From Marsupella aquatica (lineage: Eukaryota > Plantae > Marchantiophyta), in the NCBI GenBank assembly GCA_973895155.1, contig OZ316899.1, positions 4,219,241 through 4,283,240 on the forward strand: a stretch of DNA of 64,000 bases. Reading direction: 5' to 3'. The notes beneath the pieces were generated by a model. That model was not told the origin of the DNA. It searched no databases and saw only the letters and a program-made list of their open reading frames with translations. Made by a program: the position numbers and the translations under genes. Positions 3,484 to 50,134 of the stretch are shown here, one piece after another; position 1 is the stretch's first letter, and every line of letters begins with the position of its first letter.

Positions 3484-3500
3484 TCCTCCTTTACTTACCT
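3484..3500 (-). promoter_or_regulatory. Polypurine tract of element B
   Basis: AGGTAAGTAAAGGAGGA abuts the TG start of the 3' LTR on the minus strand. Confidence 0.85.
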
Positions 3501-25396: not shown

Positions 25397-25414
25397 CCCT
25401 GACTAGGCATCACA
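25397..25414 (-). repeat. 18-bp remnant of an element X terminus
   Basis: CCCTGACTAGGCATCACA versus TCCTGGCTAGGCATCACA at 59613-59630. Confidence 0.6.
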
Positions 25415-25639
25415 CGTACTATAATTTCTCTAAGACAATGAAAGGGCCGAGTTGCTTCTATTCCAAAAATCTCTCCAACAACAAAAAGATATGACAAGAG
25501 GGGCGAAAGGTGCAAAAAATAAAGGCAAGAAATCCTATCGTCCAAATTTATCCTTGATTAATTGCACTGTAAACAGGACCAACACTGGTAGATTTGAAAC
25601 AAGATTGTTTGTAACCACAACAAAAGAAATCATTGAAGA

Positions 25640-26679: not shown

Positions 26680-27257
26680 TGTAATAGAGGGTTTAAGCCC
26701 TTAAGGATATAAAAGTTATCATATATGAAAAAAATGGTTTTCAATGACCATGTTGAGGACCTTGAATGACTATTTAAATATCTTTGAAGTATATTAAGCT
26801 TGAATCATGCCAAGGTGCATGTAAAGATGTTATGGTTCCTCATCCAACTCAATAGTGAAAGAGGAAGAAAACCATAAATGGATTGGTATTGGGAAAATTT
26901 GATATTGAGGAGAGACCTATTTCAAACCCTCAAGGAATGGTTTGGCTTTGGAATTGAGATCCAACTTTTCACAAATTTGAGTTAGACGGTTAATTCTAAG
27001 ATGAATTAATCAGTGCATTTTAGTAACAAGTAGCTCAAACATTTATCAAGGTTGTGTTGCCCCACATTCTAATAGTTCATGGGAAAAATTACACCAGCTA
27101 AGTCACGGAAATTGAGGAGTTATTCCATCCAGAATTTGAAGCGATTTCCATCCGGTTTTTGAGTCGGTTTTTGATCCGATTTGGACATATCACCTGGTAG
27201 AAAATTGACCATAACTCTCAAACCATTTATCCAAATCAAGATCTATAAAGTGTGTTG

Positions 27258-27421
27258 TGTTGTAACCATTTACTCTAGACCATGGTTAACCCCTAACCCT
27301 ATCCTGAAGGGGTAACATGGGTTAACACCAACCCCAACATGTAACCCTATGGTGACTATATAAGTCACACCCATAATGGAACACAATAGCGAGTTGCAAG
27401 TCTCTCCATTGTCACACAACA
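27258..27421 (+). repeat. Copia 5' LTR
   Basis: TGTTGTAACC...CACACAACA; contains CTATATAAG; followed by CGTTATCAGCGC (Bianca-type PBS candidate). Confidence 0.97.
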
Positions 27422-27877
27422 CGTTATCAGCGCGATAGCATCTAATTTTTTTTTTTCAGTTTGGAGTTAAGGTAGGATAATTGGAGTACGGCTTTCAGAC
27501 AAAGAAATTGACTTCCAATGTTGCGTTTTTAGCCCCACCCCACATCAGTAACTGCCACCGATTCAAATCACACCATAATTTAAACTTCGGATCCTCTGAA
27601 TAGTCCACGAATCCTTACGGAAAACACACAATCCGTATATAATTGATTAGTGACACTATCGGAGAGGCATGAATCACTTTGAAATAGTGTTTTCCCGTTC
27701 AAATTCGACTCAATTTTTTTTATATCTTATTGTTCCGCCACGGAAATCCTGAGTTTCTTTTATCGCCAAGGAAAATCCCGTGGATAAAAAGGCACGAGTG
27801 ATTGAAGTAATTGAGAACGACATAGATTTGATATTAATCAGAACGCGGACAGTGATTTGTTACAGATTTGAGATACT

Positions 27878-32497: not shown

Positions 32498-32850
32498 GCA
32501 GCTCGAGCCGACAGACGACAGCCGACTCGACGACGATGCAACCTAAAACTTTCGTTCCTGTATACATAGACAGAATACGATTTTTCATACCAATACAAGA
32601 TAGAATAATTATTATCGTAAACACCCCATTTAAACTAAGGGGAAGTAGTTTTAGTAATAGGGGACCCAAATTAAACTTTACATTTGGACAAATTATAAGG
32701 TAGACTCACCTTAGTGCAAATTTAAGAAAATCCTACTAATGGTGGCTAGAACCCTTTTTCCTTATGAAGAAAGCAGAAGGTTTTAATGGGGTAGCACCAA
32801 AAATAAACATAGGGTTAGTAGTGTGGTGATTTTATACCCCTAAACTCTCC

Positions 32851-33023
32851 AAGGGGAAGTGTTGTAACCATTTACTCTAGACCATGGTTAACCCCTAACC
32901 CTATCCTGAAGGGGTAACATGGGTTAACACCAACCCCAACATGTAACCCTATGGTGACTATATAAGTCACACCCATAATGGAACACAATAGCGAGTTGCA
33001 AGTCTCTCCATTGTCACACAACA
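32851..33023 (+). repeat. Copia PPT (AAGGGGAAG, 32851-32859) and 3' LTR (32860-33023)
   Basis: Direct repeat of 27258-27421 preceded by a purine run. Confidence 0.96.
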
Positions 33024-34621
33024 TGTTGGAAAGTTCTTTCCAAGGCGGTTAAGATATATATAAAGAAGTCTGAAAATGGATTCGATATGACCCACTTAAT
33101 ATTATGAGATGCAACCAAGAGATATCCAAAATTTCCGGACAAATAATGGAATGAAGACTTTGAAACGTTATTTCCACACTATTAGACTTTCAAGAATGAC
33201 TTTGGACCAATAGGAAGCATGATCCATGGCTAAGGACCTTAACCAATTAAAATGGTTGGATAAGTATGAAAGAATACTATGAAAAGATATACCCATTCAT
33301 TGGAAGATGGAGAGACTCAATAGTCAAATTCTTATTACTCTTGCACTCCTACATTTTACCTACACCAATGGACACCATCTCATGACCTTATCTTTGGAAA
33401 TCTTTCACTTTGGAACCAAGAAATGTACACCCCTCCCTATTTTATTACTACAACCTTTGGAGGTGTCACTTTCATGCCAAACCCTCTTAACTCCATTGAC
33501 CCAGCAATAGACCCCACACTGGTGAAACCTAACACTTCAAGTCCTGATCAGTAAAGAGTTATTCCATCCGGGATTTGAACCGGTTTCTGATCCGGTTTCG
33601 TGTTTACGGCCTTATAAAACTTAGTATAGAAAGAATTAGACTTTGAATTTTTGCTGAGTACTTTATCTCATAGTCTAGTTTCATACTTTAGTATTACTTT
33701 TGACTTTTACACTTAGGTTAGGAAATGAAGAGGCATACCTCTTCAACTTTTGTTTAGAGGAGACTTGTCTACAAGTATAAGAGGGAAAGTTTCCACCATT
33801 TCACTTAGACTTACATTGCACTTGTGAAAGTCTCCTTCTTTGAAAAGAAGTAATAGATTTCCTAATTATCTTTGGTAATCTATGACTTGTGTTTGGAATT
33901 TAGTGTGTGACCATACTTGCTAGAATCTATTTGATGTGACTAACAATGCCATGTCAATATTCAGATTGACTGAAAATGCATGCTTGAGTTCATGCAAAGA
34001 TCTGAATTGACTTGAGTGTTTGGAATACTTAACAAGTATTTTTGGAAGATGCGTCAGACAAGAACTCACAATTACCATAGATCCAGAAGAGCAATCTGGA
34101 GAGTTGATTAAAAGAGGAAGCTTGTTCGGAGTGATGAGTACCGCCTTGTTTTGATTTGGCCATAAAGTTAATACAGGCTTACTTCTATATATCTTTTATA
34201 GATTCTTAGATGGTTGGCTTTAGAGATTAGCTTTAGGCATCAGCCTAATTTAGTCAAACTCTCTGTTGACTCTTAATAATGTCTAACTTAGTCATAGATT
34301 ACTAAGTGGTGAGAGGAGAAGAGACAATTCAGGCTCGCCTAATCCTATCTTTATGTCACCTGCTTTTGGTTGTTTTGTTATATTTTTAGAATTGATTATT
34401 GTACTATTGACGATACAAAGGTCACAATACCTGAGGATGTATTAAAAATTCCTTCCACTTGACCTAAGAATGTCGGTAAAGGCTTGAAATCTGAGATAGG
34501 TTAGCTTAATCATCTCAAAGTATGTTAGAACAATCTTTTAGGTCTCACAAGATTTTAACGGGAACAAACTTTGGTTGTTTAAGAGGAAAAGAATTCATTT
34601 TCCCCTAAACCCTACTCTACA

Positions 34622-35255: not shown

Positions 35256-35507
35256 TCACAACGATGGTAGGCCACTTTGCTTACAATAGTTTCCAAGGAT
35301 CTTTGGGAGATTACCCAACTTTTCTTCCGGTTCCCAAGTACTTTTGGCCTGGTCGTAGCTAGCCCAATTCACCAAATACTCTAAGATTTGTCTTCCTAGA
35401 TTGCGTTTGTAACGGTGGTCCAAAATTGTCTCCACCTCAAACTCTTTCGCGTCCTCCACCAGCATGGCGTCTAGACGCAAGACCTGATCCTGGTTGGGAT
35501 CATTACT
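35256..35507 (-). pseudogene. pol: Chromodomain at the end of A3 integrase
   Basis: FEVETILDHR...EYLVNWASY...STWEPEEKL. Joins in frame to YHVSRLKKFVKS at ~48455-48490 across the D TSD. Confidence 0.92.
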
Positions 35508-36936
35508 TGTGGTATACCCGTTAGCGATAATCTTCTAAATAGGAGACATTTTTAATTTTTTTGGATGGAAGTTAGAAACTTTGAGGTTGTAAGCAGGATA
35601 ATTAGCCATAAAGAGCATTAAGTGAGTAGGGAAGAGGAACGGCCTTTACCAAGAAATGAGCGCTTCAACCTGGTGACCGGTAGCAGTAAGAGCGCGAGAA
35701 AGAATGAGTACTGGCGGAGGAGCTATGCAGGTCGAGGAAGAAAACCGAAGGCTTAGGACAATTGTTGAAGCTGTAATGTGACACCCCTGATTGAAGACAG
35801 GGCGCTGCGAGTAAAACAGGGATAATTTTTGGGCAGAAGTGTCAACTCATAAGAGGCGCCCTCTGTTAGTAGTTCTTAAGACAGCACTATTTACTTACTC
35901 AGAGCACCTTTAGTAAGTTTACTAAGTAGATGTTCACTATTGTTTTACCGACAGCGCTACTAGTTGATTTTCCACCATAGTAAGAAGTCTCTTTTCTAGT
36001 TAGCAGCACTCAGTACTCTACTACTTTTCATACTAGTTAAAACTACAGTATGTAGTTTAGTTTAGATCAGCCTTTCTAGATCTCATTTTAGTTACTTTTC
36101 TTTCTAGATTCTAGGGAACACTTTCTCTGCCCTGACTTTGATGATACTTAAGCCCTTGTTTTTCCTCATTTCGGGTGAGAAGGACTAAATTGGAAGCCTG
36201 GCTGTAGATGCAAGACTCCCGGTCGCTCCCTTTGTTTGTGATCTATTCAGTTGTAGAGATTGCAAATGAAGTAAATGTTTGTGTTGAGGAATTTGTTTTG
36301 AAAGATTCCTCGATAAACAAGTGTATGTTCAACTTCTGGAAATCAAGATGAATTTTATGATTGATTGCTTACAGTGATGAGAATCATTCAAAATTCAAAG
36401 ATGAATGTTTATAGGAAAGTGTCAAATCTATCATTGAGGGACAAGAGTACCATTATTATGCCCTGGACTTTTGCATTAGTGTTTTGTCTATGCCATACCT
36501 GATGCCTAGCCAAACCGTGTTGCCATCATTTTAATGCAAAGCTCGGCAATTATAATCTGAAATTTACCTTCAAAATGGTAGAGATTATATCTTTCCTGTG
36601 ATCTTCTCATGACAAGAGCGAGATTTTGAAGGAGAAGAATATAGGAGAATGGGTTGAGTAAGACCCTAATCTTTGTTGAAGGAAGGGCAATGCCATTCAT
36701 ATTCCTTGAATTCTTCCTTATGTAAATCCACCTTCAATCATGATTCCAGAATTAGTTGTTACTGGTTGATTTTATTCTGTGTTTGATCGGTTGAAGATAG
36801 AGAAATTTGAGAGGTCAGCTTATATCTCTTCATTAACACTATTTCCTTCAATAGCTTCCACTTTGTTCTTTACGGGATCGACTTTGGGTTATCTTTGGCT
36901 TTAAACCTTGTGTTTTATTTATAGACCTATACCACA
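35508..36936 (+). repeat. Element D 5' LTR (1429 bp)
   Basis: TGTGGTATA...TATACCACA; followed by the PBS. Confidence 0.93.
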
Positions 36937-36944
36937 TAGATTTT

Positions 36945-36962
36945 TGGCGCCGCTGCCGGGGA
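36945..36962 (+). promoter_or_regulatory. Element D PBS, tRNA-Asp type
   Basis: TGGCGCCGCTGCCGGGGA, one base off the Athila-type TGGCGCCGTTGCCGGGGA. Confidence 0.9.
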
Positions 36963-37569
36963 ACGAATTGGAAGTAATTGAAACTCAGGCAGTGAATGCC
37001 ACTTGTAGTGAAGGATTTTAAGAGCTTAGAAGGGAGAATTTTGGCCTCATGGAGCCATCTGTGGAATGGCCGGTGATGACATTTGAGACCTATTCTTTCA
37101 CCATTGACAATGCACCACCTTCTTTTGAAGAATTGTGGCGAAGGAGAGCGCTCCGTGCAACTGAAAGGAGAAAAGAACGCACCATTAAGAAAGAAAAGCG
37201 AAATGGTGCATAATTCTCTGGCAGGGGCGGATTCTTGGTCCAGACGGAGGGAAGTGTTACTTTTTTGTACAGTATCAGGAGAGGAGCGCTGCTTTACTAT
37301 GAAGAGCGCCGCGGGTTGAGGATGTATTGGTTCTGTTGAAGGGGGAGGCCCTGGGTTCAGGGAGATTTCAGGGAGATTCGAGGGAGATCCAAACCATTAC
37401 GCTCAAGAGGAAGTTCTGGAGGAGAGCGCTATTAGATAGCAAAGGACGACTCCAGCCGGAAGCGGAAAATTCGGAGATTGGACTTGTGCGGCAGTTACAG
37501 ACGGAGCGCTACGGGATAGCAAGGGGCGCCCTCAGATTTGAAGCTGGCCCGGACGCTATCATGCCCTAG

Positions 37570-37866
37570 GTTCAGGGAAGTACCTTTGAGTTTCAAGTAA
37601 GGGTGGACGGCTTCTTGATTAGAACGGTAAGGCTGGACAGAGGTTCGAGAGTGAATTTGCTTTCTTCTTGGTTGGTAGAACAATTAAATTTGGGACCACT
37701 TTTTGCCACCACAGTTAGGATTTGGTATGACGGGCATATCCTTCGACCTGTAGGGGAACTTAGGTCACTTGCTATTCAAGTGGGGGATGAATACTATGTT
37801 ATGGATTTTGTTATAATCGATCCCCCAGTCATGGAATTTCCTGAAATGGTGTTGCGATCCTTTTAA
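37570..37866 (+). pseudogene. Protease-like reading frame upstream of D gag
   Basis: VRLDRGSRVNLLS...PVGEL......MDFVIIDP aligns by eye to the element's own VPVDGGSSVNLMT...PVGRL...LEYIVISP. No ATG; preceded in frame by TAG. Confidence 0.55.
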
Positions 37867-37916
37867 GCTGGTAAAGGAGGAGGCAGGCAGTATCAAGAGG
37901 GGTAGAGAAATGAGGA

Positions 37917-40900
37917 ATGACTGAGAAAAATCAGCAACCAGGCAAGGAGGAAACCCAAGTCTCGACGTCCCAAGTCCCATCCTTCGAATCACCGGTTCAA
38001 CCGAGGGGGTTAATTGCAGAATTTCAGTCACCAGACTTTCCGCCACCTGGAAGTGTAAACGCGAGATTATCCCTCATTCAGCAGAATGATTCGAGGGGAA
38101 CTCTGGAAGCGCCAACTTCTAGTAGACCAGGATTTGTGAACTTACGTTCTGGACCGAAGTTGATTGTCCCACAAAAGCCTCGAAAGAAGCCTGGAATTTC
38201 GGGGAGTTTAAGACGAGCCAGTAGTTTGGATGATCACATAACTCCATCGAGTTTTAAAACTTTCGGAACATCTCTGGTGTGGCAAGAACGAGAGAACTCA
38301 CTTACCCCGCAGGAGGAGCAGAACCAAGGTAGCCTTGAGCAACCCGCAGAAGTCACAACTACGACGCCAGGCACCGCTTTACCAGAGATTGCCCAAGACC
38401 CTTATGACACTCCTGAGAGTGTTTTTGTGGTACCATTGGGAGGCGTTGAGGACTTAGATAACCTGTATACATCTCAGACATCCCACTCGGGAGTATCTTC
38501 GTTGGGAAGTGGTACATCAAATTCCAGTTTACCTTCCAGCACAACCCGCACGCCACGAGGCGGGACCTCTACCCCCGGAAGTACTAAGAGCGCCTCTCCT
38601 TCTTCAGCAGCGCCCGTAGTTACAATGGCCCGGAACCATGTGCGGTATGATAGATTTTTTGGGACCTCAAAGGAGGATGCAGAGGTTTACCTGAAGGAGT
38701 TTGAGGCCTCAGCAACTTCTAATGGGCAGAGCCTGGATGCAGAGAAAGCCAATTTATTCGGGGGGCTAATGAAGAAAAGAGCACAGAAATGGTACGATCG
38801 GTTCCCAACCAAACAGGATTGGCCCAGTGTGAAGGCTGCGTTCTTGGCTAAATTCCAAGAAGATGGAGCAGCAGCCCGAGCATTTACTCGGATATCTCAC
38901 TTACGTATGAAGAAGCATGGCTCGGTAAGAAAATACGCTGATAAACTGTTGGATTTGGTTGACCAGTATAACCTTGCCACTTCTAAATTAACTGTGAGAG
39001 ATTGGTTTGTCAACGGGCTACCTTCCCGTATTGCCCGATATGTGAGGAGAGAGGGAGGCACGACTTTTGATGAAGCACAAGAAGCCGCACAGAAGTATGT
39101 CGATTCTGAGATTTCAGGGAAGAAACGGGTGAGGAAGGACTTGAAACGAGATAGGCATAAGAAGAAAAATAAATCCAAGGACAGCTCAGAATCGGAGGCA
39201 GAAACCACTAGCAGTTCCAGTGACGACGAGTACAGCTCCACGACCACTACCAGTGAGAGTTCGACCTCTTCTTCAGATTCGGAGAAATCTACTCCAAAGA
39301 AGAAATCTTCCAGCAAGGGGGCCTCCAAGACCACTCACCCGAAGAACCTGGATCGGTTGATGTCAGATCTTAGTGGCAAGTTGTCTAAATTAAGTGTCAA
39401 CATTGCTGCTCTTAAACCTGTGAGACGACAACCGCCTGCTATGAGAGTAAACGTTTGGTGTGCTCGTTGCAATCAGCAAGGCCATTATCCAAGTGAATGC
39501 CCGAATTCCAATCTGAAGGTAAATTACATGCAGATGCAGGAGGAGGCGGAGGGTTATGACTATGATAATTCCTATGCTGTGATAGCACCTGGGGGAAGTC
39601 AGTATTTCCCATCGACACCTCAACCAGCTCCTGGACCAGCATGGGCATCTTCGAAGCCGAATTATGGTCGAGCAGTGCCGAGGCCACCTATGGGACCTCC
39701 TGGAGGATATCCACCTCGTGGTGCACCTCGAGCAAAGGGCTCTTGTTGGAACTGTGGTCAACCAGACCACTATTCTCCTCAATGCCCCTACCCTAGGCAG
39801 GAGGAAGGCTACACGCCAGTCTGTGGGAATTGTCATAAAGAGGGCCACCTGCCAGTTGAATGCCCCAATCCTCCCAAACCCAAAATGATGGTGCGCTTTG
39901 CCCAGGAACCAATTAAGGAGACTACCAGGCCGGAAGCAAAGGTTCGCATGGTATACTCCGAAGAAGTTGAGCATTGTGGATTGATTCATCATACACAGGT
40001 AAATCGTGTCGAAGGGAAGGCCGATTCACTCTTTGCTCAATCTTTATCCGGAGTAGTACCCGATGTCATGGTGGAGCACTTAGTGAAACCGGAAGTGGTG
40101 GGACTACCTAATGCGAGAGTGCAGGACAGGGACAAGGTCTTGAAAAATATTTATGCCACCACTCGCTCCAAGCGAAAGGAGGAGAAGGAATTGGCTGTTG
40201 TAAAGAAGAAAAACACGGAGAGTAAACCTCGTGCACCAACAGAGGAAGGACTTCCCAAGGACCAGGATCCAGCTTATGATCGGTACGATCCGAAATACTT
40301 TCTACCCGATATTTCTTCAGAGGTCAAAGCTCAATTGAAGGAGCTAGTAAAGGAGACTCCTCCCGACCCCACCCTGAAGGAGGTAAAGGCACCAAAGCAC
40401 AATTCTCCCATTGGTCCTTCTCAAGGATATGACATTTTGGCAGATGTGAAGAACTCCCCAGCTCAGATTACTATAGGGGAACTGTTGCAAGATAACCCAG
40501 TGTACAGACGGCAGCTTCGAGGTCTCCTCACTGGTCGAAGACGAAGACGGAAGTTACCGGAGGTGGAGGTGCTACGAGTGATCAGTCAGGATTTAGGCCC
40601 ACCCGAGATCGAGGTACAGGTTCAGGGATGTGTGGTGAAGGGAGTCCCAGTTGATGGAGGCTCTAGTGTTAATCTTATGACTCAGCAGACAGCGTTCGGT
40701 CTTGGCTTCACAAAGTTGGAGAGCACACCAAAGATTTTGCGGATGGCGGACCAATCACGAGTTGTCCCTGTGGGGAGACTAAGTGGAGTGGAAACTCTCA
40801 TTGCTGGGGTTCCTTTTTCCTTGGAGTATATTGTCATTAGTCCTGATACTCCTTCGAGTTTCCCCATTTTGTTGGGTCGACCTTGGCTGTACAAGGCTCA

Positions 40901-41141
40901 TGTACAGGTGAATTGGAGGACTCGAGAATTAACCTTTGGACAACCCAAGGTGGTGGTGAGCTGGGCACCAGACAGACATCAAGGTGAGACTGTGACCGAT
41001 GATGGATACACTTCGGACTTTTCGGATTCTACTTTAATTTTGGACCCTCTAGAGTTTGAGTTGGAAGAGGTTCGATATTTGGAGTTGTACTATGCGGACG
41101 TATCTGCTAGGGGATCTGCTCAAGTACCCAAGGAGTCGTGA
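37917..41141 (+). CDS. gag: Element D Gag-protease, 1074 aa
   Basis: S/T/P-rich N-terminus, capsid region (YDRFFG..EDAEVYL..F), three CCHC knuckles, VDGGSSVNLM, ILLGRPWL. Confidence 0.95.
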   Translation: MTEKNQQPGKEETQVSTSQVPSFESPVQPRGLIAEFQSPDFPPPGSVNARLSLIQQNDSRGTLEAPTSSRPGFVNLRSGPKLIVPQKPRKKPGISGSLRRASSLDDHITPSSFKTFGTSLVWQERENSLTPQEEQNQGSLEQPAEVTTTTPGTALPEIAQDPYDTPESVFVVPLGGVEDLDNLYTSQTSHSGVSSLGSGTSNSSLPSSTTRTPRGGTSTPGSTKSASPSSAAPVVTMARNHVRYDRFFGTSKEDAEVYLKEFEASATSNGQSLDAEKANLFGGLMKKRAQKWYDRFPTKQDWPSVKAAFLAKFQEDGAAARAFTRISHLRMKKHGSVRKYADKLLDLVDQYNLATSKLTVRDWFVNGLPSRIARYVRREGGTTFDEAQEAAQKYVDSEISGKKRVRKDLKRDRHKKKNKSKDSSESEAETTSSSSDDEYSSTTTTSESSTSSSDSEKSTPKKKSSSKGASKTTHPKNLDRLMSDLSGKLSKLSVNIAALKPVRRQPPAMRVNVWCARCNQQGHYPSECPNSNLKVNYMQMQEEAEGYDYDNSYAVIAPGGSQYFPSTPQPAPGPAWASSKPNYGRAVPRPPMGPPGGYPPRGAPRAKGSCWNCGQPDHYSPQCPYPRQEEGYTPVCGNCHKEGHLPVECPNPPKPKMMVRFAQEPIKETTRPEAKVRMVYSEEVEHCGLIHHTQVNRVEGKADSLFAQSLSGVVPDVMVEHLVKPEVVGLPNARVQDRDKVLKNIYATTRSKRKEEKELAVVKKKNTESKPRAPTEEGLPKDQDPAYDRYDPKYFLPDISSEVKAQLKELVKETPPDPTLKEVKAPKHNSPIGPSQGYDILADVKNSPAQITIGELLQDNPVYRRQLRGLLTGRRRRRKLPEVEVLRVISQDLGPPEIEVQVQGCVVKGVPVDGGSSVNLMTQQTAFGLGFTKLESTPKILRMADQSRVVPVGRLSGVETLIAGVPFSLEYIVISPDTPSSFPILLGRPWLYKAHVQVNWRTRELTFGQPKVVVSWAPDRHQGETVTDDGYTSDFSDSTLILDPLEFELEEVRYLELYYADVSARGSAQVPKES

Positions 41142-44099
41142 CAATCACAGAATGACCAGGAGGCCCCGCAACTAGAAGCGCCCTGTGTTGAGGAAGAGCG
41201 CTCACCCCATTTGGAGGAGGCGGATATGGAGCTTCCAAAGTTTAGAGAATTTGAACTCAGACCAGCGGGTCTTACTGAAGGGATAGTAGACACTGCTGCG
41301 TGCCAGAAAATTGAGATCGAACCTGGTAAGTTCCTCAACATCGGTCAGCACATCCAGGGCGAGCTGAGAGAACGGTATATTTTGCTGCTAACCCAATACA
41401 AGGACGTGTTTGCCTGGAGTCATGCAGATTTGAAGGGGATACACCCACACCTTGGAGAACATAGGATTGACCTGATGGAAGGGGCAGTTCCAGTTCGCCA
41501 GAGGCAATACCGTCTCAACCCCAAGTACTCAGTTCTTGTTAAAGATGAGTTAGATAAGCTTACCTCTGCTGGGTTTATTTACCCTGTACTGAGCAGCGAG
41601 TGGGTATCCCCTATTGTCATCGTTCCCAAAAAGCCTGGTCCGGACGGAAAGATGAAGATCCGTGTTTGTCAGGATTTCCGGAGACTGAATGCTGCCACTC
41701 GTAAGGACCATTACCCTCTCCCGTTCATTGACTCCGTCCTGGATTTAGTCGCACGTCATGAATGGTATAGTTTTTTGGATGGGTATTCCGGATACAACCA
41801 AGTCTCAATTCGTCAGGAGGACCGCGATAAGACTACTTTTACCACCGACTGGGGCACATATGCTTTCACCATGATGCCTTTCGGCCTATGTAATGCCCCT
41901 GGAACTTTCCAGCGCATAATGATGATTATTTTTCAGGAGTATTTGAGGCGCTTCATGGAAATTTTTATTGACGACTTCTGTGTGTTTTCTAATTCTGTGG
42001 CTGACCACTTGATACACCTTGAGAAGACCTTTCAGAAGTGCCGGGACGCTCAGCTGTGCCTACACCCAGAAAAGTGCTACATTGGAATGCAGGAAGGCAT
42101 TTTGTTGGGCCATGTCATTTCTCAGCGAGGTATTGAGGTGGATAAAGAAAAAATTCGAGTGATCTTAGAGCTGCGACCTCCGGCTGATTTGAAGCAGTTG
42201 AGGGGGTTCCTGGGACACGTGGGTTACTATCGACGATTTATACATAAGTACTCGGATAGGGCTCTACCCCTCACTCAGTTGCTGAAGCAAGAGGTTCCTT
42301 ACACTTGGACACCTGAGCGACAGGCTGCTTTTCAAGCCTTGAAGGAATGTTTGGTGACCGCTCCAGTCTTGTCCCCTCCTAATTGGAGTAAGAAGTTTCA
42401 TGTTTTCACTGATGCTTCTGCTTTCTGTGTAGGGGCTAATCTCAGCCAACGCGATGAAGCAAATAGGGACCATCCGATTTACTATGCAAGCAGGCAGATG
42501 AGTGCAGCGGAAAAACATTACACTGTTACTGAGAGGGAAGCTTTGGCAATTGTGTTCGCATGTAAGAAATTCCGCCACTACTTGCTCGGCTATCAGGTTG
42601 TTTTCCATACGGACCATAATTCCTTGAAGTATTTAGTCAATCAAGTGGACCTTTCGGGACGAGTGGCTCGCTGGGTTCTTCTGTTGCAGGAGTTCGATTA
42701 CGAGGTTCAGGTGCGGCCAGGGCAGCATCATGAGAATGCGGATTTTTTATCCCGACTTCCTGGTCCTGTGAATGAGCATAGTCTCTCTGATGACTTTCCT
42801 GATGAGCAACTTTGGCATATCGAAGGTGAGTCATCCAAATATTTTGATATTGTGCAAATGTTGTTACATGGGATATTTCCTCCGGATCTGAATGCAGAAG
42901 AGAGGGCGGTGTTTATGCATAAGGTTGGACCCTACTCCATTATCAAGGATGTACTCTTTAGACAAGGTCCTGATCAGAAGTTCCGAAGGTGTCTGGAAGA
43001 GAGAGAAATACCGACAGTGTTACAAGCTCTTCACCAGGGGGATACTGGTGGCCACTATGCCGTCAACACCACAGTTCGAAAGATCCAGGATGCCGGATAC
43101 TGGTGGCCCACAATGCATAGGGATACTTACCTATTCATTAAGAGTTGTGACCCCTGTCAGCGAGTGGGAAAACCGACTGCTTCCTCCAAGTGGCCCTTGA
43201 CATCCATTTTGCCATTGGCTCCTTTCGAGAAATGGGGAATCGACTTCATTGGACCCATTTCTCCAGCAGCACGGCGAACCCGTAGTAAGTATATTATCCT
43301 TGCTACCGACTACGCCACCAAGTGGGTGGAAGCAGCTGCCACGAGGAAGAACGATGCTAACACTGCTGCTGCCTTTTTGTTTGAGCACATTATAACTCGC
43401 TTTGGTTGCCCACTGGAGTTGGTAAGTGATCGCGGCCTTCATTTTCTGAATGCAACTATTGAGCTGATCACAGATCTTTACCTCATTAAGCACCGGAAAA
43501 CTACCCCATACAACCCTCGGGCAAATGGGCTTACAGAGAGGGCTAATGGTATCATGGGAAAAATCCTCAATAAGATGGTAGCAGCCCACAAAACTGATTG
43601 GGACATTAAGTTATTCTCTGCATTATGGGCTTATAGAACTGCAGAGAAAATAACAACCTTACGCACCCCTTTTTACCTGACTTACGGATTTGATAGTATT
43701 GTCCCTATTGAGTTTTCCATTCCCACCGACAGAATTTTGGTGCCCGACCGGCTGTCAGTTGAGGAGAGTTTACCGCATAGACTAGTTGACCTTAATTTAT
43801 TAGAGGAAGACAGACTCGCTGCTTTGCATCACACTCATGTCGTCCAGAGTAAGCGTAAGAAGGTCTATGATGCTAAACTGAAAAAAGTGGAGTTAGACGT
43901 GGGTGATTTAGCCTTAATTTATGATTCTCGTTTTATGTTGTTCCCTGGAAAGATGCATACTCATTGGCTAGGACCATATCGTGTTACCAACATATGGAGT
44001 AATGGATCTGTAGCGTTGACTACCCTTGATGGTCATCCTTTAGATACTCGAATAAATGGCTTCCGTCTTAAACGCTATCATTCACCTGCCCCAGACTAG
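41142..44099 (+). CDS. pol: Element D RT-RNase H-integrase, open and in frame with gag-PR after one TGA
   Basis: FLDGYSGYNQV, MPFGLCNAP, FIDDF, FTDAS, HTDH, GGHYA..C..CQ, KWGIDFIGP, SDRG, WLGPY, NGFRLKRY; no internal stops. Confidence 0.95.
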   Translation, partial: QSQNDQEAPQLEAPCVEEERSPHLEEADMELPKFREFELRPAGLTEGIVDTAACQKIEIEPGKFLNIGQHIQGELRERYILLLTQYKDVFAWSHADLKGIHPHLGEHRIDLMEGAVPVRQRQYRLNPKYSVLVKDELDKLTSAGFIYPVLSSEWVSPIVIVPKKPGPDGKMKIRVCQDFRRLNAATRKDHYPLPFIDSVLDLVARHEWYSFLDGYSGYNQVSIRQEDRDKTTFTTDWGTYAFTMMPFGLCNAPGTFQRIMMIIFQEYLRRFMEIFIDDFCVFSNSVADHLIHLEKTFQKCRDAQLCLHPEKCYIGMQEGILLGHVISQRGIEVDKEKIRVILELRPPADLKQLRGFLGHVGYYRRFIHKYSDRALPLTQLLKQEVPYTWTPERQAAFQALKECLVTAPVLSPPNWSKKFHVFTDASAFCVGANLSQRDEANRDHPIYYASRQMSAAEKHYTVTEREALAIVFACKKFRHYLLGYQVVFHTDHNSLKYLVNQVDLSGRVARWVLLLQEFDYEVQVRPGQHHENADFLSRLPGPVNEHSLSDDFPDEQLWHIEGESSKYFDIVQMLLHGIFPPDLNAEERAVFMHKVGPYSIIKDVLFRQGPDQKFRRCLEEREIPTVLQALHQGDTGGHYAVNTTVRKIQDAGYWWPTMHRDTYLFIKSCDPCQRVGKPTASSKWPLTSILPLAPFEKWGIDFIGPISPAARRTRSKYIILATDYATKWVEAAATRKNDANTAAAFLFEHIITRFGCPLELVSDRGLHFLNATIELITDLYLIKHRKTTPYNPRANGLTERANGIMGKILNKMVAAHKTDWDIKLFSALWAYRTAEKITTLRTPFYLTYGFDSIVPIEFSIPTDRILVPDRLSVEESLPHRLVDLNLLEEDRLAALHHTHVVQSKRKKVYDAKLKKVELDVGDLALIYDSRFMLFPGKMHTHWLGPYRVTNIWSNGSVALTTLDGHPLDTRINGFRLKRYHSPAPD

Positions 44100-44123
44100 G
44101 CTTGTGAGGGCACTGCGCCGTTT

Positions 44124-44235
44124 GAAGGGGGGATTATGTGGTATACCCGTTAGCGATAATCTTCTAAATAGGAGACATTTTTAATTTTTTTGGATGGAAG
44201 TTAGAAACTTTGAGGTTGTAAGCAGGATAATTAGC
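44124..44235 (+). repeat. Element D PPT (GAAGGGGGGA) and first 99 bp of the 3' LTR (44137-44235)
   Basis: Identical to 35508-35606, then breaks off into filler DNA. Confidence 0.93.
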
Positions 44236-44258
44236 AGGATAATTAGCAGGATAAAAGC

Positions 44259-47200
44259 AGGTCCCATAGGTGGCCTCGGCACTGCTCGACCATAATTCGG
44301 CTTCGAAGATGCCCATGCTGGTCCAGGAGCTGGTTGAGGTGTCGATGGGAAATACTGACTTCCCCCAGGTGCTATCACAGCATAGGAATTATCATAGTCA
44401 TAACCCTCCGCCTCCTCCTGCATCTGCATGTAATTTACCTTCAGATTGGAATTCGGGCATTCACTTGGATAATGGCCTTGCTGATTGCAACGAGCACACC
44501 AAACGTTTACTCTCATAGCAGGCGGTTGTCGTCTCACAGGTTTAAGAGCAGCAATGTTGACACTTAATTTAGACAACTTGCCACTAAGATCTGACATCAA
44601 CCGATCCAGGTTCTTCGGGTGAGTGGTCTTGGAGGCCCCCTTGCTGGAAGATTTCTTCTTTGGAGTAGATTTCTCCGAATCTGAAGAAGAGGTCGAACTC
44701 TCACTGGTAGTGGTCGTGGAGCTGTACTCGTCGTCACTGGAACTGCTAGTGGTTTCTGCCTCCGATTCTGAGCTGTCCTTGGATTTATTTTTCTTCTTAT
44801 GCCTATCTCGTTTCAAGTCCTTCCTCACCCGTTTCTTCCCTGAAATCTCAGAATCGACATACTTCTGTGCGGCTTCTTGTGCTTCATCAAAAGTCATGCC
44901 TCCCTCTCTCCTCACATATCGGGCAATACGGGAAGGTAGCCCGTTGACAAACCAATCTCTCACAGTTAATTTAGAAGTGGCAGGGTTATACTGGTCAACC
45001 AAATCCAACAGTTTATCAGCGTATTTTCTTACCGAGCCATGCTTCTTCATACGTAAGTGAGATATCCGAGTAAATGCTCGGGCTGCTGCTCCATCTTCTT
45101 GGAATTTAGCCAAGAACGCAGCCTTCACACTGGGCCAATCCTGTTTGGTTGGGAACCGATCGTACCATTTCTGTGCTCTTTTCTTCATTAGCCCCCCGAA
45201 TAAATTGGCTTTCTCTGCATCCAGGCTCTGCCCATTAGAAGTTGCTGAGGCCTCAAACTCCTTCAGGTAAACCTCTGCATCCTCCTTTGAGGTCCCAAAA
45301 AATCTATCATACCGCACATGGTTCCGGGCCATTGTAACTACGGGCGCTGCTGAAGAAGGAGAGGCGCTCTTAGTACTTCCGGGGGTAGAGGTCCCGCCTC
45401 GTGGCGTGCGGGTTGTGCTGGAAGGTAAACTGGAATTTGATGTACCACTTCCCAACGAAGATACTCCCGAGTGGGATGTCTGAGATGTATACAGGTTATC
45501 TAAGTCCTCAACGCCTCCCAATGGTACCACAAAAACACTCTCAGGAGTGTCATAAGGGTCTTGGGCAATCTCTGGTAAAGCGGTGCCTGGCGTCGTAGTT
45601 GTGACTTCTGCGGGTTGCTCAAGGCTACCTTGGTTCTGCTCCTCCTGCGGGGTAAGTGAGTTCTCTCGTTCTTGCCACACCAGAGATGTTCCGAAAGTTT
45701 TAAAACTCGATGGAGTTATGTGATCATCCAAACTACTGGCTCGTCTTAAACTCCCCGAAATTCCAGGCTTCTTTCGAGGCTTTTGTGGGACAATCAACTT
45801 CGGTCCAGAACGTAAGTTCACAAATCCTGGTCTACTAGAAGTTGGCGCTTCCAGAGTTCCCCTCGAATCATTCTGCTGAATGAGGGATAATCTCGCGTTT
45901 ACACTTCCAGGTGGCGGAAAGTCTGGTGACTGAAATTCTGCAATTAACCCCCTCGGTTGAACCGGTGATTCGAAGGATGGGACTTGGGACGTCGAGACTC
46001 GGGTTTCCTCCTTGCCTGGTTGCTGATTTTTCTCAGTCATTCCTCATTTCTCTACCCCTCTTGATACTGCCTGCCTCCTCCTTTACCAGCTTAAAAGGAT
46101 CGCAACACCATTTCAGGAAATTCCATGACTGGGGGATCGATTATAACAAAATCCATAACATAGTATTCATCCCCCACTTGAATAGCAAGTGACCTAAGTT
46201 CCCCTACAGGTCGAAGGATATGCCCGTCATACCAAATCCTAACTGTGGTGGCAAAAAGTGGTCCCAAATTTAATTGTTCTACCAACCAAGAAGAAAGCAA
46301 ATTCACTCTCGAACCTCTGTCCAGCCTTACCGTTCTAATCAAGAAGCCGTCCACCCTTACTTGAAACTCAAAGGTACTTCCCTGAACCTAGGGCATGATA
46401 GCGTCCGGGCCAGCTTCAAATCTGAGGGCGCCCCTTGCTATCCCGTAGCGCTCCGTCTGTAACTGCCGCACAAGTCCAATCTCCGAATTTTCCGCTTCCG
46501 GCTGGAGTCGTCCTTTGCTATCTAATAGCGCTCTCCTCCAGAACTTCCTCTTGAGCGTAATGGTTTGGATCTCCCTCGAATCTCCCTGAAATCTCCCTGA
46601 ACCCAGGGCCTCCCCCTTCAACAGAACCAATACATCCTCAACCCGCGGCGCTCTTCATAGTAAAGCAGCGCTCCTCTCCTGATACTGTACAAAAAAGTAA
46701 CACTTCCCTCCGTCTGGACCAAGAATCCGCCCCTGCCAGAGAATTATGCACCATTTCGCTTTTCTTTCTTAATGGTGCGTTCTTTTCTCCTTTCAGTTGC
46801 ACGGAGCGCTCTCCTTCGCCACAATTCTTCAAAAGAAGGTGGTGCATTGTCAATGGTGAAAGAATAGGTCTCAAATGTCATCACCGGCCATTCCACAGAT
46901 GGCTCCATGAGGCCAAAATTCTCCCTTCTAAGCTCTTAAAATCCTTCACTACAAGTGGCATTCACTGCCTGAGTTTCAATTACTTCCAATTCGTTCCCCG
47001 GCAGCGGCGCCAAAAATCTATGTGGTATAGGTCTATAAATAAAACACAAGGTTTAAAGCCAAAGATAACCCAAAGTCGATCCCGTAAAGAACAAAGTGGA
47101 AGCTATTGAAGGAAATAGTGTTAATGAAGAGATATAAGCTGACCTCTCAAATTTCTCTATCTTCAACCGATCAAACACAGAATAAAATCAACCAGTAACA

Positions 47201-48449
47201 ACTAATTCTGGAATCATGATTGAAGGTGGATTTACATAAGGAAGAATTCAAGGAATATGAATGGCATTGCCCTTCCTTCAACAAAGATTAGGGTCTTACT
47301 CAACCCATTCTCCTATATTCTTCTCCTTCAAAATCTCGCTCTTGTCATGAGAAGATCACAGGAAAGATATAATCTCTACCGTTTTCAAGGTAAATTTCAG
47401 ATTATAATTGCCGAGCTTTGCATTAAAATGATGGCAACACGGTTTGGCTAGGCATCAGGTATGGCATAGACAAAACACTAATGCAAAAGTCCAGGGCATA
47501 ATAATGGTACTCTTGTCCCTCAATGATAGATTTGACACTTTCCTATAAACATTCATCTTTGAATTTTGAATGATTCTCATCACTGTAAGCAATCAATCAT
47601 AAAATTCATCTTGATTTCCAGAAGTTGAACATACACTTGTTTATCGAGGAATCTTTCAAAACAAATTCCTCAACACAAACATTTACTTCATTTGCAATCT
47701 CTACAACTGAATAGATCACAAACAAAGGGAGCGACCGGGAGTCTTGCATCTACAGCCAGGCTTCCAATTTAGTCCTTCTCACCCGAAATGAGGAAAAACA
47801 AGGGCTTAAGTATCATCAAAGTCAGGGCAGAGAAAGTGTTCCCTAGAATCTAGAAAGAAAAGTAACTAAAATGAGATCTAGAAAGGCTGATCTAAACTAA
47901 ACTACATACTGTAGTTTTAACTAGTATGAAAAGTAGTAGAGTACTGAGTGCTGCTAACTAGAAAAGAGACTTCTTACTATGGTGGAAAATCAACTAGTAG
48001 CGCTGTCGGTAAAACAATAGTGAACATCTACTTAGTAAACTTACTAAAGGTGCTCTGAGTAAGTAAATAGTGCTGTCTTAAGAACTACTAACAGAGGGCG
48101 CCTCTTATGAGTTGACACTTCTGCCCAAAAATTATCCCTGTTTTACTCGCAGCGCCCTGTCTTCAATCAGGGGTGTCACATTACAGCTTCAACAATTGTC
48201 CTAAGCCTTCGGTTTTCTTCCTCGACCTGCATAGCTCCTCCGCCAGTACTCATTCTTTCTCGCGCTCTTACTGCTACCGGTCACCAGGTTGAAGCGCTCA
48301 TTTCTTGGTAAAGGCCGTTCCTCTTCCCTACTCACTTAATGCTCTTTATGGCTAATTATCCTGCTTACAACCTCAAAGTTTCTAACTTCCATCCAAAAAA
48401 ATTAAAAATGTCTCCTACTTAGAAGATTATCGCTAACGGGTATACCACA
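44259..48449 (-). repeat. Inverted copy of D 5' LTR (48449-47021), PBS (47012-46995), leader and gag 5' part (from 46040)
   Basis: Reverse complement of 35508-39698 with at least six substitutions seen. Confidence 0.96.
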
Positions 48450-48454
48450 TTACT

Positions 48455-50134
48455 TTTGACAAATTTCTTGAGCCGGCTAACATGGTAGCTTTTGCCTACG
48501 TCCATTTCCTTGGGTGTCTCCAACACCACCAAAACCGGATTATCCTTGTGGATCCGTTGTATGATGCAATAGGGCCCCACATATCTGGGGCCAAACCAAC
48601 TTCCTACTTATGTTCCCATGGTATTGTTCAGATCTCAACTATAACCAAGCGCTCTCCCCAATTTTAAAGCTTACCTGGCGTGGATGCTTATCTCCTTGCT
48701 CCTTGTACCGACTTTGGGCAAGGGTCATACCCTTGGTAGCCGCTTCTACAACTAGGCATTGCTCTTGAATAAAATTGTCTGCAGAAGGAACCTTGCTCTC
48801 TGTCCGCCAAGATTCCCAATTTATGAACTAGGAGGGCGCCCTTGGCATCCTCCCTGTGACCAACACAAACGGGGAAAACCCCATTGCCAAATGCTTGGTT
48901 GAGTTATACCTAAACTTGACCATTGTTAAGTGCTTTGCCCAATCCTTTTGATTGGTTGTCACAAAATGATGCAAATGGTCCTCAACAATATCATTCACCT
49001 ATTCCGTTTGGCTGTCCGTCTTATGATGATACGCTGATCCCCTAGTAAGGTCTGTGCCAGATAACCGGAATAACACCTTCCAAAAGTGGCCCGTGAACTT
49101 TGTATCGCGGTCGAACAGGATATGCAACGACAATCCCCATTGTTGGAAGACATTGTTAAACACTACACCAACAACCTCTTGGGCCAACCATTTTTGTAGT
49201 CGGCAAGAAATACGTCATCTTGGAAAAACAACCCATGATTGTTAAGATGGAGTTATTGCCGTGGGACTCAAGTAACCCAACAATGAAGTCCGTGGAGATG
49301 GACTCCCATGGAGCCGCGGCTAGAGGTAAACGTTGCAAAAGTCCTCCGTTCGGTTCTTTTGGCACGAGTAACAACTTTGCACGTGGCAAAGGAACGATTG
49401 CTTCATGTTTGGCCAATACACATCTCGCAACATGGTGCAGTACATAGAAGCTTGTCCGTCGTGCCTACCCTAAGACGAGTTGTGGTACTTTTGTAGAACC
49501 TCAAGTCTTAGAGACTTTGGTATGTACACAGCCTCTGCTTGTATTGCCATAATTGGACATCATGCATGGCATCCAACCCCAATGAAATGTGCCTCACCTT
49601 GCCTTGGCCACCCCCATTGTTTTGTCATTCCTTGGCTAACTTGTCATCCCCATATGCCTTGGCCAAAACCTTTGGCCACTCGGATTCAAGCATTGTGATT
49701 GCATTGACACGATCATGGTTCCTATGCGATAACGCATTAGTTGTCGTGTTTGTCTTCTCAGGAACATGACGGACTTCAAAATCAAAATCCGCCAAGAACA
49801 TCTGCCAGCACATTTCCTTGGGGTTCAGCCTTGGCTTAGAACTGAAGTATCCGACTGGCAAGCTATCTGTGTGTATTATCACCCTAGGACTGTTCTTAAG
49901 GTAAATCTTTCACTTCTTCAACACATAGATTACCGCATACATTTCCCTTTCCGGTGTGATCCAATGATTTCCCAACTTACATGACTCAAATGCCACACGA
50001 TGCCTATCTTGGTGAAGACAGAAGCCAATGGCATAATCACTTGCGTCTGTCCAATCTCAAACAACTTCCCCATCTCAGATAACTTTAGAACTGATGGCGT
50101 TATCATTAGCCACTTGAGTTTTAGGAATGCTAAC
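48455..50134 (-). pseudogene. pol: A3 RNase H and integrase, degenerate
   Basis: IIHTD, W..FLADFDFEV, APWESISTDFIVGL, FDRDTKFTGHFW, AYH..TDSQTE; many stops. Confidence 0.9.

What the first reader, a model, noticed from the sequence alone, without database searches (positions are those of the whole stretch)
35508..48449. Palindromic retrotransposon bounded by two U3 ends: a potential natural hairpin silencer
Seen: 5'LTR-PBS-gag-pol-PPT-99 bp of 3' LTR, then a 4191-bp inverted copy of LTR-PBS-leader-gag. Both outer ends are the LTR's U3 end and both abut the same TTACT duplication. The arms differ at six or more sites; 35539 A is shared with the 44137 LTR stub but is G in the inverted arm. Established: integrase normally joins one U3 and one U5 end, and inverted duplications such as maize Mu killer produce siRNAs that silence their family. 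Inference: two broken cDNAs joined tail-to-tail (or a fold-back cDNA) were integrated concertedly. A post-insertion template switch returning at the TATACCACA terminal repeat is the alternative. Read-through or convergent LTR transcription would give kilobases of dsRNA.
Basis: partly seen in the sequence, partly recalled or inferred. Interest (0 to 1): 0.85.

Follow-up and report, generated by a model that had tools for sequence, protein, structure and literature searches.

The report
Retrotransposon insertion with two identical ends
A liverwort-type jumping gene sits in the genome as a 12.9-kb unit whose right third is a mirror copy of its left third, apparently pasted in as one piece by its own integrase; that is an unusual way to insert, and the layout could make double-stranded RNA against its own family, which is untested.

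Summary
Window 35508-48449 is a Ty3/gypsy element with this layout: 1429-bp LTR, PBS, gag-PR, RT-RNaseH-IN, PPT, 99 bp of 3' LTR, a 23-nt stuttered filler, then an inverted copy of LTR-PBS-leader-gag. The arms are 4191 nt and differ at 6 sites. Both outer termini are the U3 end and both abut TTACT.

Contigs from public runs show paralogous empty sites where the two flanks are contiguous, so the whole unit lies inside one 5-bp target duplication.

My best reading (about 0.6) is that host end joining linked two truncated cDNAs tail-to-tail. Integrase then inserted the product through two U3 ends, which look the same to it because of a 9-bp terminal inverted repeat. A post-insertion fold-back returning at that repeat is possible (about 0.25). 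It is not favoured by microhomology, because 131 other shared 9-mers were available. An assembly artefact is unlikely (about 0.08), but I could not exclude it: no listed contig bridges the junction, and contigs drop rare paths.

Four of the six arm differences are methylation-type C>T changes, and all three in gag are non-synonymous, so the arms decayed after formation.

The silencer role is structurally plausible and untested, since no RNA run holds the stretch. This is a new variant of the known TSD-flanked "complex" LTR insertions.

The parts
35503..35507 (.). left copy of the 5-bp target-site duplication TTACT
   Evidence: Paralogous empty sites appear in the loose ends and are compared.
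35508..36936 (+). 5' LTR, 1429 bp, TGTGGTATA...TATACCACA (9-bp terminal inverted repeat)
   Evidence: The start is defined by identity to the PPT-adjacent stub. The end is defined by the CA terminus upstream of the PBS.
36945..36962 (+). PBS-like TGGCGCCGCTGCCGGGGA, 8 nt after the LTR (priming tRNA not identified)
   Evidence: No tRNA gene is in the window.
37917..41141 (+). gag(-protease) ORF, 1074 aa, ending in TGA in the same frame as pol
   Evidence: Pfam Retrotrans_gag and zf-CCHC. Sequence.
41142..44099 (+). pol: RT, RNase H, integrase (ORF listed from 41211, 962 aa)
   Evidence: Nearest named relatives are in the liverworts Riccia sorocarpa and Calypogeia fissa.
44124..44136 (+). polypurine tract GAAGGGGGGATTA
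44137..44235 (+). 3' LTR stub: first 99 nt of the LTR, 100% identical to 35508-35606
44236..44258 (.). 23-nt filler. With the end of the stub it forms AGCAGGATAATT x 2.8, then AGCAGG, which joins antisense gag at the AGCAGG/AGGAGG microhomology
44259..46040 (-). inverted arm, part 1: first 1782 nt of gag (an open frame of 619 codons runs on through the junction to 44181)
46041..47020 (-). inverted arm, part 2: leader and PBS
47021..48449 (-). inverted arm, part 3: complete LTR in reverse orientation, with its U3 terminus at 48449
   Evidence: The LTR contig of run X1 ends exactly at 48449.
48450..48454 (.). right copy of the target-site duplication TTACT

Best explanation
This is one integrase-mediated insertion of an aberrant, inverted-dimer cDNA of a young liverwort-type Ty3/gypsy family.

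Proposed origin. Two 3'-truncated linear cDNAs from the same parent lineage were involved. One was trimmed back to position 99 of its 3' LTR, the other to position 4191 in gag. Their broken ends were joined tail-to-tail by a host microhomology and templated-insertion end-joining reaction of the polymerase-theta type. The joining happened either before integration or just after an intasome had synapsed the two intact U3 ends. The LTR carries a 9-bp perfect terminal inverted repeat, so a U3 end looks to integrase like a U5 end. The two U3 ends were therefore inserted concertedly, 5 bp apart, giving the TTACT duplication.

Consequences. The copy could not transpose from the moment it arrived, because it has no 3' R-U5. 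It keeps open gag and pol frames and has two convergent LTRs. Any read-through transcript would fold into a stem of up to about 4 kb. The locus has since accumulated methylation-type point mutations in both arms.

What is shown: the anatomy, the target duplication, the junction signature and the mutation pattern. What is inferred: the cDNA origin, the enzyme that made the junction, and any dsRNA or siRNA output.

The confidence of 0.6 is for a pre- or at-integration origin as a whole. It includes the reverse-transcriptase strand-switch variant that is listed separately among the rivals.
For: - **One insertion.** The whole 12,942-bp unit lies between two TTACT copies. In paralogous copies of the host repeat the flanks are contiguous. 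The loose end of an X3 contig matches the left flank at 17 of 18 positions and abuts 48455, with 5 nt in between. That 18-mer occurs nowhere else in the window.
- **Natural template end.** The inverted arm ends exactly at the LTR's first base, which is the natural end of a linear cDNA.
- **Equivalent ends.** The U3 and U5 termini share 9 of 9 terminal bases.
- **Junction signature.** The junction is not a homologous misjoin. It has the 12-nt unit AGCAGGATAATT 2.8 times, at 100% matches. It then enters antisense gag through AGCAGG/AGGAGG.
- **Weak alternative.** For a post-insertion return, the terminal 9-mer is one of 132 shared 9-mers. There are also 40 shared 10-mers, 12 11-mers and 2 12-mers.
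- **Common parent.** Both arms carry the same state at 44787/39170 and at 48171/35786, where the majority contig of run X1 differs.
- **Post-formation decay.** Four of six arm differences are CpG/CHG C>T-type changes, and all three gag differences change the amino acid.
- **Canonical copies exist.** X5 record 25 runs from the PPT through the full 3' LTR.
- **Literature.** TSD-flanked complex elements formed before integration are documented in PMC1950507 and 10.1101/452573. Ligated or rearranged retrotransposon cDNA fragments are abundant (PMC12951756).
Against: - No independent data confirm the novel junction. No listed Logan contig covers 44236-44258. From the bin depths I calculate that in run X1 nothing covers roughly 44167-44258. 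Every contig laid on the right arm runs on at 44259 into ordinary gag.
- This is expected if low-depth connecting paths are removed during contig building, but it leaves the junction unverified.
- I found no published in vivo case of a U3-U3 LTR-retrotransposon insertion.
- The 9-bp terminal repeat does offer a route for a post-insertion event.
- The U3/R/U5 boundaries, promoter activity and any transcript are unknown.
Confidence: 0.6

Rival explanations
1. Rearrangement after insertion. A normal element inserted at TTACT. Later, a replication fork or a broken end left the 3' LTR at position 99, after slipping twice on AGCAGGATAATT. It then copied the opposite strand from gag position 4191 back to the first base of the 5' LTR. 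It returned to the original template at the 9-bp TATACCACA at the end of the 3' LTR. This deleted LTR positions 100-1420 and kept the target duplication.
For: The 9-bp terminal inverted repeat makes the return possible. The stutter and microhomology at 44221-44261 fit serial template switching. The arms share private variants and differ only by later-type mutations. Fold-back inversions through single-strand hairpins are well documented (PMC7467729, abstract).
Against: The copying strand had no reason to stop at the element's first base. The hypothetical nascent strand and the downstream template share 132 9-mers, 40 10-mers, 12 11-mers and 6,367 6-mers, so the terminal repeat is not a privileged landing site. 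The model needs two independent switches, one of which mimics an integrase end exactly.
Confidence: 0.25
2. Strand switch by reverse transcriptase inside the particle. The growing plus strand reached position 99 of the 3' LTR, slipped, and jumped onto a displaced or second plus strand at gag 4191. It then ran off at that strand's U3 end. The fold-back cDNA was integrated through its two U3 ends. This is a sub-variant of the pre-integration origin, and its 0.15 is already counted inside the 0.6 given for the best explanation.
For: The evidence is the same as for the best explanation: target duplication, natural template end and microhomology. Aberrant template switching during reverse transcription is the published model for tandem complex elements (PMC1950507).
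Against: The iterated 12-nt stutter is, to my knowledge, more typical of polymerase-theta end joining than of reverse-transcriptase jumps. The product would also need host repair of a flap or nick on the other strand.
Confidence: 0.15
3. Assembly artefact. A chimeric read or a misjoin between two inverted family copies created the palindrome.
For: No listed contig from four public runs bridges the filler. Contigs on the right arm continue into normal gag. No protein record holds the junction-spanning ORF.
Against: Fold-back read artefacts have no 4.5-kb spacer. A repeat-collapse misjoin occurs inside shared sequence, not at a filler between LTR position 99 and antisense gag. The right flank abuts an inverted LTR, which differs from a direct LTR at every base beyond 9 nt, so reads must have supported it. 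The arms differ by substitutions only, mostly methylation-type. The flanks form one precise target duplication. Logan contigs drop low-depth connecting paths, so the blank is weak (tool note).
Confidence: 0.08
4. Two separate events. A second copy inserted in reverse orientation into the first, followed by two deletions that removed everything between LTR position 99 and gag, and between the inverted U3 end and the original U5 end.
For: Antisense self-nested insertions do occur, for example EVD in PMC11624286.
Against: There is no integrase-type junction (LTR terminus plus 5-bp duplication) inside the unit. The model needs two precise deletions. The arms share private variants.
Confidence: 0.02

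Closest known systems
TSD-flanked 'complex' LTR retrotransposon insertions (Sabot & Schulman 2007, PMC1950507; Zeng & Sun 2018, bioRxiv 10.1101/452573)
   Same: A multi-part element of one family is bounded by a single 5-bp target duplication. Its outermost LTRs are near-identical. This is taken as evidence that the composite formed before integration.
   Different: Those elements are tandem (LTR-internal-LTR-internal-LTR) with a normal U3 end on one side and a U5 end on the other. This one is inverted, has two U3 ends, and its inner junction is non-homologous with a stuttered filler.
Mu killer of maize (Slotkin et al. 2005, as cited in PMC3440606 and PMC11624286)
   Same: A naturally arisen long inverted duplication covers a transposon's terminal region and the 5' part of its coding sequence. 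In principle it can give a hairpin RNA of about 4 kb.
   Different: Mu killer derives from a DNA transposon through a chromosomal rearrangement. It is transcribed from a flanking gene, and its silencing activity is shown genetically. Here the element is an LTR retrotransposon, the promoters would be its own LTRs, and no expression, siRNA or silencing data exist.
Antisense self-nested EVD insertion in Arabidopsis (PMC11624286)
   Same: Inverted LTRs of one LTR-retrotransposon family lie a few kb apart. The authors propose them as a source of LTR hairpins or convergent transcripts that start transcriptional silencing.
   Different: That structure comes from two ordinary integrations, each with its own ends and duplication. 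This one is a single unit with one duplication and no internal integrase junction.
Fold-back inversions / inverted duplications by hairpin or template switching (PMC7467729)
   Same: An inverted duplication with a spacer and a microhomology junction.
   Different: Those are chromosomal events whose ends have no relation to transposon termini. Here the outer end coincides with the LTR terminus to the base and preserves a target duplication.
DIRS-type retroelements with inverted terminal repeats
   Same: A retroelement bounded by inverted repeats.
   Different: By my own knowledge, DIRS elements use a tyrosine recombinase and make no target duplication. This element encodes a DDE integrase (Pfam rve and Integrase_H2C2) and has a 5-bp duplication. 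Canonical copies of the family have direct LTRs.
Inverted T-DNA dimers joined with filler DNA (own knowledge; mentioned in PMC11624286)
   Same: Two linear DNAs are joined at their unprotected ends, with microhomology and templated filler, while the protein-bound ends face the genome.
   Different: T-DNA ends are joined to the genome by host repair without a fixed duplication. Here the outer ends show an integrase-type 5-bp duplication.

Membership tests
Ty3/gypsy LTR retrotransposon | pol domain order RT - RNase H - integrase | tested here: met
   Pfam RVT_1 139-301, RT_RNaseH 392-495, Integrase_H2C2 598-653 and rve 670-769 in the 962-aa ORF.
Ty3/gypsy LTR retrotransposon | gag with zinc knuckle upstream of pol | tested here: met
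   Retrotrans_gag and zf-CCHC in ORF 37917-41141.
Ty3/gypsy LTR retrotransposon | LTR with TG...CA termini, PBS after the 5' LTR, PPT before the 3' LTR | tested here: met
   The priming tRNA was not identified.
Ty3/gypsy LTR retrotransposon | two direct LTRs, with a U3 end on one side and a U5 end on the other | tested here: not met
   The 3' LTR is a 99-nt stub. The right terminus is an inverted U3 end. The locus is an aberrant copy. Canonical copies of the family exist (X5 record 25).
Ty3/gypsy LTR retrotransposon | 5-bp target-site duplication | tested here: met
   TTACT on both sides. Empty-site paralogs.
Pre-integration 'complex' LTR insertion (Sabot & Schulman type) | a single target duplication around the whole composite | tested here: met
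Pre-integration 'complex' LTR insertion (Sabot & Schulman type) | outermost LTRs highly similar | tested here: met
   3 differences in 1429 nt.
Pre-integration 'complex' LTR insertion (Sabot & Schulman type) | tandem arrangement sharing a central LTR | tested here: not met
   The arrangement is inverted, and the central junction is stub-filler-antisense gag.
Mu killer-like hairpin silencer locus | long inverted duplication of transposon sequence | tested here: met
   4191-nt arms at 99.86% identity, with a 4560-nt loop.
Mu killer-like hairpin silencer locus | transcription across both arms | not testable with these tools
   No RNA run holds the stretch.
Mu killer-like hairpin silencer locus | arm-derived siRNAs and heritable trans-silencing of the family | not testable with these tools
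   No small-RNA, methylation or genetic data are available.
DIRS-like retroelement | tyrosine recombinase instead of DDE integrase, and no target duplication | tested here: not met
   rve integrase and a 5-bp duplication.

The most novel reading that the evidence does not exclude
Active LTR-retrotransposon families may generate their own 'killer' alleles through integrase itself. When cDNAs are abundant, broken cDNAs are joined tail-to-tail and inserted through two like ends. That creates promoter-equipped inverted repeats whose read-through hairpin RNA yields siRNAs that start family-wide silencing. This locus would be the first natural example, in a liverwort. The unverified note s1-329009 describes an LTR body with 252-bp inverted repeats and a 5-bp duplication in the same genome, and could be a second.
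Probability: 0.12. Interest if true: 0.85.

Novelty: new variant of a known kind. Interest (0 to 1): 0.55.

Why it matters
Two questions meet at this locus.

1. **Integrase substrates in vivo.** If the structure is real, it is natural evidence that an LTR-retrotransposon integrase can carry out concerted integration with two U3 ends. By my own knowledge this is known in vitro for retroviral integrases. I could not find it reported for a genomic insertion.

2. **How silencing starts.** How silencing of a newly active LTR family is first triggered is an open problem. Rearranged copies that form hairpins are a favoured but rarely observed candidate (PMC11624286). Here the hairpin-capable allele belongs to a young family (contigs about 99.9% identical to the window). 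That makes the idea directly testable with small-RNA and methylation data and with accessions that lack the locus.

If it proves to be a post-insertion fold-back or an artefact, it is a curiosity of little wider interest.

Tried and rejected
- **Read support.** One sequencing-run run and one read-laying run were allowed. Only Logan contigs were available. No listed contig bridges 44236-44258 or 48449/48450. I treat this as inconclusive, because low-depth connecting paths between high-depth repeat unitigs are typically removed and the tool warns that contigs show presence, not absence. Run X2 was only 57% read and has holes across the LTR.
- **Exact-protein look-ups.** I looked up the junction-spanning 619-aa ORF, gag-PR and pol. 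None is on record.
- **Homology search with gag-PR**. Nothing at E <= 1e-20, so I obtained no extra family copies.
- **Metagenome scans.** I scanned for a junction word and for a canonical PPT-LTR word. Both were blank. The collection therefore lacks the family, and the junction blank means nothing.
- **Window search for further copies or an empty-site paralog**. None was found. The empty-site evidence came from the loose ends instead.
- **tRNA genes for the PBS**. None in the window.
- **Canonical TATA[AT]A or AATAAA motifs in the LTR**. None, so I could not place the U3/R/U5 boundaries.
- **Autointegration.** Rejected, because it gives circles or LTR-terminus-to-internal junctions, not an internal-to-internal junction on a linear unit with two U3 ends.
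- **Inversion by recombination between inverted copies.** Rejected, because it cannot change the outer terminus inside a fixed target duplication.
- **Depth ratios in X1.** Pol end 47.8, gag-leader 90.3, LTR 175.7, flank about 15. These fit extra gag-leader copies, but the tool warns that depth is not copy number, so I do not use them.


Full report
**1. What is there**

The window carries a perfect-looking inverted repeat, with arms at 35508-39701 and 44256-48449 and 4554 nt between them. It also has a 99-nt direct repeat, 35508-35606 = 44137-44235, at 100% identity.

A base-by-base comparison finds 7 mismatches. The one at 39699 is followed by only two chance matches. True homology is therefore 35508-39698 against 44259-48449. 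That is 4191 nt with six differences, at 35539, 36571, 36576, 37957, 38974 and 39061.

The left unit is a Ty3/gypsy element:
- a 1429-bp LTR (35508-36936), TGTGGTATA...TATACCACA;
- a PBS-like TGGCGCCGCTGCCGGGG 8 nt downstream;
- a 1074-codon gag ORF with a zinc knuckle;
- a 962-codon ORF with RT, RNase H and integrase domains;
- the PPT GAAGGGGGGATTA directly before 44137.

The two ORFs are in the same frame, separated by a single TGA at 41139-41141. The nearest named relatives of pol are in the liverworts Riccia sorocarpa (58-63%) and Calypogeia fissa (65%). This agrees with earlier notes of the scan that call this genome liverwort-like.

The LTR start is the end next to the PPT, so both outer termini of the 12,942-bp unit are U3 ends. 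Both abut TTACT.

**2. The target duplication is real**

The host sequence is itself a high-copy repeat. When contigs of four public runs were laid on 43100-49000, several contigs matched from 48455 rightwards and carried "loose" letters to the left. Those letters are left-flank-like sequence:
- the X3 consensus matches 35485-35502 at 17 of 18 positions;
- the X1 consensus matches at 20 of 25 positions;
- neither occurs anywhere else in the window.

In paralogous copies of the host repeat, then, the two flanks are contiguous with five bases between them. The whole palindromic unit occupies one integrase-type 5-bp staggered cut.

**3. The inner junction**

The stub ends in AGCAGGATAATTAGC. The assembly then repeats the 12-nt unit. 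Tandem Repeats Finder gives 44221-44254, period 12, 2.8 copies, 100% matches. A last AGCAGG follows and runs into antisense gag, whose own sequence there is AGGAGG-TCCC.

The junction is thus a microhomology join preceded by iterated, locally templated synthesis. This is not what a repeat-collapse misassembly looks like, since those switch inside shared sequence. It is also not what a fold-back read artefact looks like, since those have no 4.5-kb spacer.

**4. Is it independently supported?**

Not yet.
- All runs available were Logan contigs.
- No listed contig bridges 44236-44258.
- The bin depth in run X1 is fully accounted for by contigs ending at 44166 and starting at 44259 (my arithmetic).
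- Contigs on the right arm continue at 44259 into ordinary gag.

The junction path would be about 50 k-mers at single-copy depth (about 15 in X1). It would link unitigs of depth 90 and 176, and such links are usually removed in contig building. The tool itself says contigs show presence, not absence. I therefore treat the test as inconclusive.

The same call does show two useful things:
- Canonical copies exist. X5 record 25 runs from the PPT through the 3' LTR.
- The family is young. X1 contigs differ from the window at 2 of 2802 and 2 of 1419 positions.

Exact-protein look-ups and metagenome scans were blank and uninformative.

**5. History of the arms**

- At 44896 all four runs read the left-arm state, and at 48418 run X1 does. 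The right arm is therefore derived at both sites.
- No difference row is listed at the other four sites. That suggests the left arm is derived there, with the caveat that 16 rows were not shown.
- Four of the six differences are C>T/G>A changes at CpG or CHG sites.
- All three differences in gag change the amino acid: Q/R, L/P and T/M.
- Both arms share a state that differs from X1's majority contig at 44787/39170 and at 48171/35786.

Together these indicate that the arms came from one parent lineage and were identical or nearly so when formed. They have since decayed independently in a methylated, unselected state. This also argues against an artefact.

**6. How it arose**

Two families of explanation fit the target duplication.

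*(a) Before or at integration.* A linear DNA, or two synapsed DNAs, carried a U3 end on each side. The 9-bp perfect terminal inverted repeat makes a U3 end equivalent to a U5 end over the terminal bases that integrases read (the equivalence itself is inference). The inverted arm stops exactly where a cDNA stops.

*(b) After insertion.* A fold-back template switch left the 3' LTR at position 99 and returned at TATACCACA.

I tested how special that return site is. I compared the strand that would be made by copying leftwards from 39698 with what would lie downstream in a canonical insertion. They share 132 9-mers, 40 10-mers, 12 11-mers, 2 12-mers and 6,367 6-mers. The terminal repeat is one option among very many, so (b) needs a coincidence of order 1% or less, and (a) needs none.

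Within (a), the iterated stutter favours host polymerase-theta-type end joining of two truncated cDNAs over a reverse-transcriptase jump. That preference rests on my own knowledge of such junctions. Ligated and rearranged cDNA fragments are abundant when LTR elements are active (PMC12951756).

My odds:
| Origin | Odds |
|---|---|
| Pre- or at-integration (about 0.45 end joining, 0.15 RT switch) | about 0.6 |
| Post-insertion fold-back | about 0.25 |
| Assembly artefact | about 0.08 |
| Nested insertion plus deletions | about 0.02 |
| Unassigned | remainder |

**7. What it does now**

The copy cannot retrotranspose normally. A transcript from the left LTR has no 3' R, because the 3' LTR ends at position 99.

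A transcript from either LTR would instead run into the antisense copy of its own 5' part and could fold into a stem of up to about 4 kb with a 4.56-kb loop. The two LTRs also face each other, so convergent transcription is possible.

This is the structural logic of Mu killer and of the LTR-hairpin idea proposed for EVD (PMC11624286). It is only a possibility here:
- no RNA run holds the stretch;
- the LTR has no canonical TATA or AATAAA motif by which I could place the start and end of transcription;
- the right-arm-specific A>G at 35539/48418 lies in the only TATA-like motif near the LTR start (CTAAATAGG becomes CTAAGTAGG), a speculative point.

**8. Comparison and novelty**

The closest documented class is the TSD-flanked complex LTR insertions formed before integration (PMC1950507; 10.1101/452573). 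Those are tandem and have normal ends.

I found no report of an inverted, two-U3 insertion in four literature searches. The library is incomplete, so this is not proof of novelty.

I class the locus as a new variant of a known kind. Interest is moderate (0.55): the structure is unusual and makes a long-standing idea testable, but it is a single locus with an unverified junction and no functional data.

An unverified note from the scan (s1-329009) describes an LTR body with 252-bp inverted repeats and a 5-bp duplication elsewhere in this genome. I could not read that sequence. It is the obvious place to look for a second case.

Noticed in passing
window 41139-41147: gag-PR and RT-RH-IN are in the same frame, separated by a single TGA (GAG TCG TGA CAA TCA). 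The closest relatives in the protein collection also have pol as a separate product of about 940-965 aa. The stop may therefore be a lineage feature (read-through) rather than a lesion.
   Followed up: partly
window 27257-33027: A young Ty1/copia element lies just left of the finding. It has 169-bp direct repeats (27257-27425 and 32859-33027, 99.4%) around an open 1539-aa gag-IN-RT polyprotein.
   Followed up: partly
window 24449-26398: An older inverted arrangement has arms of about 730 bp (24458-25178 against 25636-26367, about 82% complementary, about 460 bp apart). Both arms resemble 62428-63392. It may be two copies of an LTR-like repeat head-to-head. Its origin was not examined.
   Followed up: no
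window 48450-49000 and 35400-35507: The sequence that received the insertion is a very high-copy repeat in all four runs. Summed contig depth there is tens of times or more that of pieces laid nearby.
   Followed up: no
window 48001-48072 (LTR positions about 378-449): Family copies in the organism B runs (X3, X5) carry a 70-bp deletion in the LTR relative to this copy, and many substitutions. The organism A runs match the window almost exactly.
   Followed up: no
window 44181-46040 (- strand): The truncated gag of the inverted arm stays open for 619 codons and reads through the filler into the antisense LTR stub. If the right LTR is active, the locus could encode a C-terminally altered Gag fragment.
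   Followed up: no
window 1495-3484 and 17345-19334: A 1990-bp direct repeat pair at 97.2% identity, probably the LTRs of a large element about 15.9 kb apart. Other notes of the scan cover gene-bearing LTRs in this region.
   Followed up: no
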